Positions 27,958 through 28,345 of a stretch of DNA of 64,000 bases are shown one piece after another (positions within the stretch are counted from its first letter, which is position 1; every line of letters starts with the position of its first letter). The position numbers and the translations under genes are program-made. Where the stretch lies: assembly GCF_006345805.1 (NCBI RefSeq), contig NC_043022.1:5828001-5892000 (forward strand), in the 5' to 3' direction. The stretch is from Octopus sinensis (lineage: Eukaryota). Under the pieces are notes generated by a model, which saw only the letters and a program-made list of their open reading frames with translations, had not been told where the DNA came from and ran no database searches.

Positions 27958-28345
27958 ACGTTCTGAGTTCAAAACCCGCCGAGGTCGACTTTGCCTTTCA
28001 TCCTTTCGGGGTCGATAAATTAAGTACCTATTTCTTTATTACCCACAAGGGGCTAAACATAGAGGGAACAAACAAGGACAGACATAGGTATTAAGTCGAT
28101 TACATCGACCCCAGTGCGTAACTGGTACTTAATTTATCGACCCCGAAAGGATGAAAGGCAAAGTCGACCTCGGCGGAATTTGAACTCACAACGTAACGAC
28201 AGACGAAATACCGCTAAGCATTTCGCCCGGCGTGCTAACGATAAATTAAGTACCAGTTACACACTGGGGTCGATGTAATCGACTCAATCCGTTAGTCTGT
28301 CCTTGTTTGTCCCCTCTGTGTTTAGCCCCTTGTGGGCAATAAAGA
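27958..28345 (+). mobile_element. SINE A1 host copy interrupted by an antisense A1 insertion
   Basis: Host sequence resumes after the duplicated cgataaattaagtacc. Confidence 0.85.
28029..28238 (-). mobile_element. Young SINE A1 inserted antisense into SINE A
   Basis: Flanking direct repeat cgataaattaagtacc at 28013-28028 and 28239-28254. Confidence 0.9.

What the first reader, a model, noticed from the sequence alone, without database searches (positions are those of the whole stretch)
28013..28254. SINE A inserts antisense into the same site of its own family (case 1 of 2)
Seen: a sense A copy is split at ...cgataaattaagtacc, a reverse-oriented young A1 sits in the break, and the 16-mer is duplicated on both sides (TSD plus microhomology). 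The same event, at the same position and orientation, occurs at 58363-58553 in a different, older host with different flanks, so the two look independent. The 3' end of a free A1 copy (aaagaaataGGT, 191-425) matches the antisense target (GGTACttaatt). Inference: 3'-end microhomology priming steers the SINE into its own conserved central domain, systematically creating inverted-repeat hairpins. Coleoid cephalopods have very high ADAR A-to-I editing (established), so this could be a self-generating source of dsRNA substrates or a self-limiting mechanism. I do not know of this being described.
Basis: partly seen in the sequence, partly recalled or inferred. Interest (0 to 1): 0.8.

Follow-up and report, generated by a model that had tools for sequence, protein, structure and literature searches.

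The report
Young SINE nested backwards in SINEs
Two copies of a young short retroposon landed independently, and backwards, at the same nucleotide inside two older relatives, most likely because that spot carries the short DNA motif this family prefers; the hotspot is real but of a known kind, and its genome-wide weight could not be tested here.

Summary
At 28013-28254 and 58363-58553, a 5'-truncated, reverse-oriented copy of one young SINE subfamily splits an older SINE directly after ...AAGTACC. The two inserts are 98.7% identical. Each is flanked by a 15-17 bp target-site duplication written in that host's own sequence variant. Hosts, truncation points and outer flanks all differ, so these are two independent insertions, not one copied composite.

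The four other copies with the same 3' tail (three in the window, one in an outside contig) sit in unrelated DNA. Their 3' flanks nevertheless resemble the nested target (RRTAY; P about 0.002). The family therefore has a general target preference, and the shared SINE core carries a good match to it. GTACC occurs at 34 pre-insertion sites in the window, 10 of them in SINE cores.

I could not separate 3'-end base pairing from endonuclease preference. Orientation bias (n=2), genome-wide recurrence and any ADAR link are untested, because no cephalopod genome was reachable. Site 1 can form a long hairpin; site 2 forms only a weak one. The closest precedent is the single-nucleotide Alu-in-Alu insertion hotspot.

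The parts
28029..28238 (-). Insert 1: young A-subfamily SINE copy, 210 bp. 5'-truncated (lacks about 23 nt including the A-box-like TGGCAGAA segment), with an intact 3' end ...AATAAAGAAATA abutting the left TSD copy.
28013..28028 (+). Left copy of the 16-bp target-site duplication CGATAAATTAAGTACC. Its 3' end (GTACC^) is the inferred first-strand nick and primer end.
28239..28254 (+). Right copy of the 16-bp target-site duplication.
27959..28028 (+). Host 1, left part: an older A-tail SINE, itself 5'-truncated (starts CGTTCTGAGTTC).
28255..28349 (+). Host 1, right part, ending ...GGGCAATAAAGAAACA.
27948..27958 (+). Host 1's own TSD, GATACCTTTGA (left copy). The right copy is at 28350-28360. 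Host 1 sits in the 3' region of a decayed LINE.
28350..28360 (+). Host 1's own TSD, right copy.
58380..58536 (-). Insert 2: the same young subfamily, 157 bp, 5'-truncated at GTTCAAATT (lacks the whole head), with the same intact 3' end.
58363..58379 (+). Left copy of the direct repeat TCAATAAAATAAGTACC. The TSD is 15-17 bp because the first 2 nt are ambiguous with the insert's 5' end.
58537..58553 (+). Right copy of the same direct repeat.
58289..58379 (+). Host 2, left part: a different SINE subfamily with the same head and core, and with the B-box region missing.
58554..58627 (+). Host 2, right part, with a non-A tail (...CCAAAATTTGAAAC).
188..422 (+). Non-nested older A-tail copy. Its TSD is GGTATCAG (179-186) / GGTGTCAG (423-430), with one mismatch and 1-3 extra nt at the 5' junction.
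60973..61202 (+). Non-nested older A-tail copy. Its exact 14-bp TSD, AATATTTAATTTTG, lies at 60959-60972 and 61203-61216.

Best explanation
Both loci are ordinary LINE-mediated (target-primed reverse transcription) insertions of one young SINE subfamily. They hit the same nucleotide of two older, related SINEs because that nucleotide lies in a short motif the family prefers.

Inferred sequence of events: the host's sense strand is nicked after ...A-A-G-T-A-C-C^. That 3' end primes cDNA synthesis on the SINE RNA's 3' end (...AAAGAAAUA). This puts the new copy in antisense orientation. The second strand is nicked 15-17 bp upstream, which makes the TSD. The cDNA is joined while incomplete, which gives the 5' truncation, with 1-2 nt of junction overlap.

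The preference (primer strand R-T-A-Y-Y^, flank RRTAY) belongs to the whole A-tail family. The core shared by the many SINE subfamilies here carries a conserved instance of it. The SINE's relatives are therefore among the commonest carriers of its own target. Nesting, and the resulting inverted repeat, is a by-product.

Shown: the anatomy, the independence of the two events, and the shared flank motif. Inferred: the order of nicks, and whether the motif is read by the endonuclease or by pairing of the primer with 3'-terminal RNA bases.
For: - Exact TSDs, each in its host's own sequence variant.
- Different 5' truncation points (210 vs 157 bp) with identical, intact 3' ends.
- Inserts 98.7% identical to each other, but only 91-92% identical to host 1.
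- Hosts from different subfamilies, and unrelated outer flanks.
- All six A-tail copies seen (five in the window, one in L001) end at AAAGAAAYA. Five are followed by RRTA, the sixth (copy 191) by GGTG, with GGTA in its 5' TSD copy.
- The four non-nested flanks match GGTAC at 11 of 20 positions, P = 0.0018 against random window 5-mers.
- GTACC occurs 38 times on both strands, 34 of them before the insertions, and 10 of those lie in SINE cores. If GTACC alone were enough, two hits in cores would have P about 0.09.
- Published precedent for insertion hotspots inside TEs, explained by nick motif plus 3'-tail annealing (PMC2836564).
- Published precedent for 1 to several nt of overlap between the 3' end and the target in CR1, L2 and RTE elements (PMC6007223).
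Against: - The motif rests on only six insertions. One TSD is imperfect (copy 191) and one copy has no visible TSD (L001).
- With the loose motif RTAYY there are 956 sites in the window, only about 14 of them in cores. Two of two in cores would then be P about 2e-4, so more context than five bases, or something family-specific, may contribute.
- No partner LINE with this tail is present in the window, so neither the enzyme clade nor the true RNA 3' terminus is known.
Confidence: 0.75

Rival explanations
1. Family-specific homing. Beyond a 5-nt motif, the SINE RNA recognises homologous SINE DNA. One route is pairing with the antisense strand of a resident copy (R-loop), which would expose the sense strand to nicking. 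Another is a read-through 3' flank from a master copy that itself sits in this site. Either would make antisense self-insertion the preferred outcome rather than a by-product.
For: Both young copies in the window (2 of 2) are in SINE cores and both are antisense. The loose motif alone makes this unlikely (14 of 956 sites). The two events also share the position of the second nick to within 1-2 nt.
Against: Four of six A-tail copies lie in unrelated DNA carrying the same short flank motif. Host 2 is strongly diverged from the insert around the site (49 nt at 86%), which is poor for homology pairing. If GTACC is the real requirement, core sites are already 10 of 34. n = 2.
Confidence: 0.12
2. 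The two loci are copies of one composite element, spread by segmental duplication, by retrotransposition of a composite, or by gene conversion of a junction.
For: The block 28002-28188 matches 58353-58539 at 96.8%, including 27 nt of host core to the left of the junction.
Against: That 27 nt is simply the conserved core, and it differs at five positions between the hosts. Each locus repeats its own variant on both sides of the insert. The host tails are unrelated, the host heads differ, the insert lengths differ by 53 nt, and the outer flanks share only microsatellites.
Confidence: 0.02
3. An artefact or a non-retroposition rearrangement: misassembly of repeats, or fold-back (inverted) duplication of the host's own sequence.
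For: The region is repeat-rich, and there is an assembly gap elsewhere in the window (39317-39416). Reads could not be examined.
Against: The inserts are not inverted copies of their hosts: they carry diagnostic bases that the hosts lack. Two loci show clean, host-specific TSDs together with 5' truncation, which is the signature of target-primed insertion and not of a collapse or mis-join.
Confidence: 0.03
4. Coincidence: insertion is random and the two events share a position by chance.
For: None beyond the small sample.
Against: Roughly 1e-8 under uniform insertion (about 12 cores in 64 kb on two strands). Non-nested copies share the flank motif (P about 0.002).
Confidence: 0.01

Closest known systems
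Alu-in-Alu single-nucleotide insertion hotspot, and TE nesting hotspots generally (Levy, Schwartz & Ast 2010, Nucleic Acids Res, PMC2836564)
   Same: A SINE inserts into older copies of its own family at one preferred consensus position and in a preferred orientation. The paper explains this by sub-optimal endonuclease nick sites about 15-16 bp apart, plus annealing of the RNA 3' tail to the nicked strand.
   Different: The Alu case is in sense orientation, at the A-rich linker, driven by poly(A)/T-tract pairing, and backed by about 15,000-19,000 events. Here the orientation is antisense, the site is a non-homopolymeric GTACC in the central core, the SINE has no poly(A) tail, and there are two events.
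3'-end/target overlap in target-primed reverse transcription of tail-specific LINE/SINE pairs (CR1, L2, RTE; Nishiyama & Ohshima 2018, PMC6007223, citing Ichiyanagi & Okada 2008)
   Same: The first bases of the TSD correlate with the 3'-terminal bases of the RNA. The authors propose either base pairing at initiation or RNA-influenced choice of nick site, and say the two may not be exclusive. That is the same ambiguity as here.
   Different: Those signatures are 1-2 nt in animals, plus an upstream T-stretch. Here a 4-5 nt pattern (RRTAY) is seen. No T-stretch signature was tested, and the partner LINE is unknown.
Inverted SINE pairs as ADAR substrates (inverted Alus in primates; metazoan hyper-editing survey, Porath et al. 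2017, PMC5625713)
   Same: Two similar, oppositely oriented SINE copies in one transcript can form long dsRNA. Octopus was reported as exceptionally rich in loci able to form long near-perfect dsRNA.
   Different: Known pairs are neighbouring insertions, not one copy nested within the other. Nesting gives two alternative hairpins that cross each other, so both cannot form at once. No expression or editing data were available here.
Sequence-specific non-LTR retrotransposons that live in one repeat target (R2 in 28S rDNA, Tx1 and NeSL types; from my own knowledge)
   Same: A precise, recurrent nick position within a multicopy target, in a fixed orientation.
   Different: Those elements sit almost exclusively in their target. 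Here four of six copies are in unrelated sequence, so this is a preference rather than site specificity.

Membership tests
SINE mobilised by a LINE (target-primed reverse transcription) | Short, non-coding, multicopy element | tested here: met
   About 230 bp. There are five A-tail copies and about ten relatives sharing the head and core in 64 kb. Only short spurious ORFs are present.
SINE mobilised by a LINE (target-primed reverse transcription) | Each copy flanked by a TSD of different sequence | tested here: met
   TSDs of 16, 15-17, 14, 11 and 8 (imperfect) bp, all different. The L001 copy shows none.
SINE mobilised by a LINE (target-primed reverse transcription) | Variable 5' truncation with a constant 3' end | tested here: met
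   Insert 1 lacks about 23 nt, insert 2 about 76 nt and host 1 about 68 nt. All end at AAAGAAAYA.
SINE mobilised by a LINE (target-primed reverse transcription) | tRNA-derived head with an internal Pol III promoter | tested here: inconclusive
   ARAGORN finds no tRNA. Rfam gives no tRNA match at gathering or E-value thresholds. By eye there is a B-box-like GAGTTCAAATTCC and an A-box-like TGGCAGAATTG.
SINE mobilised by a LINE (target-primed reverse transcription) | 3' tail shared with a partner LINE | not testable with these tools
   The A tail occurs only in the five SINE copies in the window. No cephalopod genome or repeat library was reachable.
TE self-insertion / nesting hotspot (Levy et al. 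2010 sense) | Independent insertions at the same consensus position of the targeted TE | tested here: met
   Two events directly after AAGTACC of the core. Independence is shown by the hosts, TSD variants, truncation points and flanks.
TE self-insertion / nesting hotspot (Levy et al. 2010 sense) | Significant excess over the expected distribution across many nested events | not testable with these tools
   Only 64 kb plus one 543-bp outside contig were available.
TE self-insertion / nesting hotspot (Levy et al. 2010 sense) | Hotspot sequence matches the integration motif seen at non-nested insertions | tested here: met
   Non-nested flanks GGTGT, GATAC, AATAT and AATAT against the nested GGTAC, P = 0.0018.
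TE self-insertion / nesting hotspot (Levy et al. 2010 sense) | Orientation bias | tested here: inconclusive
   Two of two are antisense (P = 0.25). The opposite strand of the core reads GTACT^, which also fits RTAYY. L001 shows an A copy abutting a SINE core in sense orientation.
Site-specific non-LTR retroelement | Nearly all copies reside in one target sequence | tested here: not met
   Copies at 188-422 and 60973-61202, and host 1, are in unrelated sequences.
CORE-SINE superfamily (MIR-like central domain) | Significant similarity of the central region to the CORE domain | tested here: inconclusive
No curated CORE or octopus OR1/OR2 sequence was available. The two papers I read disagree on which octopus SINE (OR1 or OR2) is the CORE-SINE.
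ADAR substrate formed by inverted SINEs | Long, near-perfect intramolecular duplex | tested here: met
   Met at site 1 only: arms of 116 nt at 91% or 71 nt at 96%, MFE -213.7 kcal/mol, z = -18. Site 2 is marginal: 49 nt at 86%, z = -5.7.
ADAR substrate formed by inverted SINEs | The locus is transcribed and shows clustered A-to-G mismatches | not testable with these tools
   No RNA data were available. No gene was recognised in the window.

The most novel reading that the evidence does not exclude
The young subfamily homes preferentially, and in antisense orientation, into the conserved core of its own superfamily across the genome, more often than its short target motif predicts. If so, a sizeable share of new insertions would arrive already paired as tight hairpins. 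This self-nesting would then be a major and continuing source of the long near-perfect dsRNA that makes the octopus an outlier for hyper-editing, and it would also inactivate resident copies.
Probability: 0.15. Interest if true: 0.7.

Novelty: new member of a known kind. Interest (0 to 1): 0.4.

Why it matters
If the preference holds genome-wide, it gives a simple sequence-level reason why a very abundant SINE superfamily accumulates inverted pairs with almost no spacer. It also offers a concrete, countable class of loci (SINE nested antisense in a SINE core) to test against hyper-editing, small-RNA and genome-instability data in cephalopods. In addition, it would supply a clean natural data set for separating nick-site preference from 3'-end pairing in a LINE/SINE system without a poly(A) tail. 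As it stands, it is a well-documented pair of insertions illustrating a known principle.

Tried and rejected
Attempts to sample more of the genome all failed:
- A 42-aa peptide spanning the left junction of site 1 found no protein sharing even three 5-residue words.
- The SINE antisense ORF found one protein, on a 543-bp ENA metagenome scaffold (L001).
- A LINE reverse-transcriptase fragment from the window (14329-14718) found only short ENA/Logan contigs. The three long ones I fetched (L003-L006) contain no copy of this SINE and are not from this organism.
- Exact-pattern scans for the nested junction and for the A tail found nothing in JGI metagenomes, GTDB genomes or IMG/VR.
- Searching the paper library for four sequence strings from the SINE found nothing.

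Other ideas I tested or considered:
- Classifying the central domain as CORE, using a MIR consensus from memory, gave no significant match.
- ARAGORN and Rfam give no tRNA call for the head.
- I considered that the second-strand nicks also fall at TAYY^ on the opposite strand of the core (TTATC^ / TTATT^, if the ambiguous 1-2 nt belong to the insert). The three non-nested copies with TSDs do not show this, so I did not build on it.
Both hosts were already defective before the hits (host 1 is 5'-truncated, host 2 lacks the B-box region), so these two events inactivated nothing.

Full report
**What is there**

The window is repeat-rich non-coding DNA with no recognisable gene. It holds about fifteen copies or relics of a roughly 230-bp SINE-like family. 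These share a head and a central core (...GGGGTCGATAAATTAAGTACCAGTTACACACTGGGGTCGAT...) but carry different 3' tails. Five copies carry the 'A' tail...TTAGCCCCTTGTGGGTAATAAAGAAAYA:
- 188-422 (+)
- 60973-61202 (+)
- host 1 (27959-28349, +, interrupted)
- the two reverse-oriented inserts

**Check of the observation**

At site 1, host 1 is split directly after CGATAAATTAAGTACC. A reverse-complement A copy of 210 bp fills 28029-28238, and the 16-mer is repeated exactly at 28013-28028 and 28239-28254.

At site 2, a different SINE is split at the homologous core position. It has the same head and core, an internal deletion of the B-box region, and a ...CCAAAATTTGAAAC tail. A reverse-complement A copy of 157 bp fills 58380-58536. 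TCAATAAAATAAGTACC is repeated exactly at 58363-58379 and 58537-58553. The first two bases of that repeat could equally belong to the insert's truncated 5' end, so the TSD is 15-17 bp.

The inserts are 98.7% identical to each other. They share diagnostic substitutions that the other A copies lack, and they are 86-92% identical to those copies.

**Independence of the two events**

- Each locus repeats its own host's sequence variant on both sides of the insert (CGATAAATT... versus AATAAAAT...).
- The inserts are truncated at different points.
- The hosts belong to different subfamilies.
- Beyond the SINE parts, the two regions share only microsatellite similarity.
- The inserts are not inverted copies of their hosts, which rules out fold-back duplication.

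A composite that was copied, gene conversion of a junction, and misassembly are all poor fits. Under uniform insertion the coincidence is of the order of 1e-8 (about 12 cores in 64 kb on two strands, my arithmetic).

**What steers the insertion**

All six A-tail copies I could examine end at AAAGAAAYA (five in the window plus one on an outside contig, L001). Five are followed by RRTA and one by GGTG. The flanks are GGTAC twice (nested), GGTGT (GGTAT in its 5' TSD copy), GATAC, AATAT and AATAT. In four of them those bases are also present in the 5' TSD copy, so they come from the target.

I took the nested target GGTAC as a reference fixed in advance. The four non-nested flanks match it at 11 of 20 positions, and random sets of four 5-mers from the window reach that in 0.18% of trials. 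The family therefore has a general preference: the first-strand nick falls after R-T-A-Y-Y on the primer strand. The core shared by all these SINEs carries a conserved instance, AAGTACC^AG.

Because the SINEs are so common, they hold a large share of the best sites. GTACC occurs 38 times on both strands, 34 of them before the two insertions, and 10 of those 34 are in SINE cores. If GTACC alone sufficed, two of two in cores has P about 0.09. With the loosest motif (956 sites) it has P about 2e-4. The truth lies between, and a contribution from wider context or from homology cannot be excluded.

**Microhomology or endonuclease?**

That GGT belongs to the copy's own TSD (GGTATCAG at 179-186, GGTGTCAG at 423-430). 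That copy is also not of the young subfamily (88% identity to insert 1). So the argument as given is circular.

The idea itself is not excluded. TAYY on the primer strand is exactly what would pair with an RNA ending in GGUA if G.T wobble is allowed, and 1 to several nt of such overlap is documented for CR1, L2 and RTE elements (PMC6007223). A nicking preference would produce the same pattern. Telling the two apart needs the partner LINE's or the RNA's true 3' terminus, which the window does not contain.

**Orientation**

Both events are antisense, which is P = 0.25 if the two orientations were equally likely. GTAC is a palindrome, and the other strand of the core reads GTACT^, which also fits RTAYY. 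A strict ...TACC^ requirement would explain antisense-only insertion; a loose one predicts both orientations.

The one outside copy (L001) has its 3' end abutting a SINE core in sense orientation, at the left edge of the same AT-rich 15-mer. It has no visible TSD, so its history is unclear.

**Consequences**

Site 1 has two alternative inverted-repeat pairings:
- 116-nt arms at 91% complementarity (28024-28139 with 28239-28354)
- 71-nt arms at 96% (27958-28028 with 28124-28194)

The order is left-host, insert-3'-half, insert-5'-half, right-host, so the two helices cross and cannot both form. The predicted fold uses the longer one (-213.7 kcal/mol, z = -18).

Site 2 offers only 49 nt at 86% (z = -5.7), because its host is diverged and the insert is short. 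Nesting therefore does not automatically give a strong hairpin.

None of the four elements looks able to drive its own Pol III transcription: insert 1 lacks the A-box-like segment, insert 2 and host 1 lack the head, and host 2 lacks the B-box region. Any dsRNA would need read-through transcription. No expression or editing data could be consulted. The ADAR and 'self-limiting' ideas remain untested, and these two hosts were already defective.

**Comparison with what is known**

Levy, Schwartz and Ast (PMC2836564) analysed about 300,000 nested human TEs. They found that TEs insert at hotspots within other TEs. [quoted passage not shown] They explained this by two sub-optimal nick sites 15-16 bp apart plus annealing of the RNA tail. 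The present case is the same kind of phenomenon in a different LINE/SINE system, with no poly(A) tail, a non-homopolymeric motif and the opposite orientation.

It fails the test for a truly site-specific element, because most copies lie elsewhere. I found no description of this particular nesting in the searchable literature. Octopus is reported to be unusually rich in loci able to form long near-perfect dsRNA (PMC5625713). That is the reason the genome-wide count would be worth doing.

**Limits**

Everything quantitative rests on 64 kb and six insertions. No cephalopod genome, repeat library or read set was reachable with these tools. The organism itself was not verified. The SINE is consistent with the octopus-type families discussed in the literature, but I could not match it to a named one.

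**Verdict**

It is a new member of a known kind and of moderate interest.

Noticed in passing
L001 1-543 (ENA metagenome scaffold ERZ23499442, read on the minus strand): This is the only outside copy of the A-tail SINE I found. Its 3' end (...AACGAAATA) abuts, in sense orientation, the 3' part of a different-tail SINE. That SINE begins at AATATATTAAGTTGCC, which is the counterpart of the GATAAATTAAGTACC 15-mer duplicated in the nested events. The upstream flank is an (ATT)n/(GTT)n run and no TSD is visible. It could be a sense-orientation hit on the same AT-rich segment, a template-switch chimera, or a short-read mis-join.
   Followed up: partly
window 10209-10400, 11298-11490, 44971-45150, 53982-54180: SINE copies with the same head and core but other tails (...CCTAGAGTAGAAAAGAAT or ...AAAATTTGAAAT). 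Their tails end in (ATT)n-like runs, and they lie directly next to (ATT)n microsatellites at one or both ends. This suggests a tail-repeat/target-repeat relationship for the sister subfamilies too.
   Followed up: no
window 37766-39018, especially 37995-38250: An array of about 110-bp units (2.3 copies at 78% by TRF, with further weak nhmmer hits on both sides). The units contain a degraded piece of the SINE core (..GGGGTTGATAAAATACCAGTGA..) on the minus strand, so this is a tandem repeat apparently derived from the SINE.
   Followed up: partly
window 39317-39416: A run of 100 N (an assembly gap) that cuts a SINE copy. The sequence resumes inside a core (GGTCGAAAAATCAAGTACCAG). A second, 5'-truncated SINE follows head-to-tail at 39492-39641.
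   Followed up: no
window 14074-14210 and 58289-58627: Two SINE copies lack the B-box region (about 40-60 nt between the head and the core) at slightly different boundaries. These are either recurrent internal deletions or a deleted subfamily.
   Followed up: no
window 27480-28560: A decayed 3' end of a LINE: a reverse-transcriptase C-terminal region with stops (...LRWTGHLMRMKDSRIPK*). Host 1 inserted into it, so the structure is three layers deep: LINE, then older SINE, then young SINE. A second RTE-like RT fragment, an open 129-aa ORF, lies at 14329-14718.
   Followed up: partly
window 3642-4340: A minisatellite with a 39-bp unit that reads as a repeated 13-aa string (GKVAEFLSSIGPY) in one frame, about 15 units. 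It is open in several frames on both strands, so it is probably non-coding.
   Followed up: no
window 27958-28354: Nesting places the two inverted-repeat pairs in a crossing order (L, R', L', R). The 71-nt and 116-nt helices are therefore mutually exclusive, unlike an ordinary pair of neighbouring inverted SINEs.
   Followed up: yes
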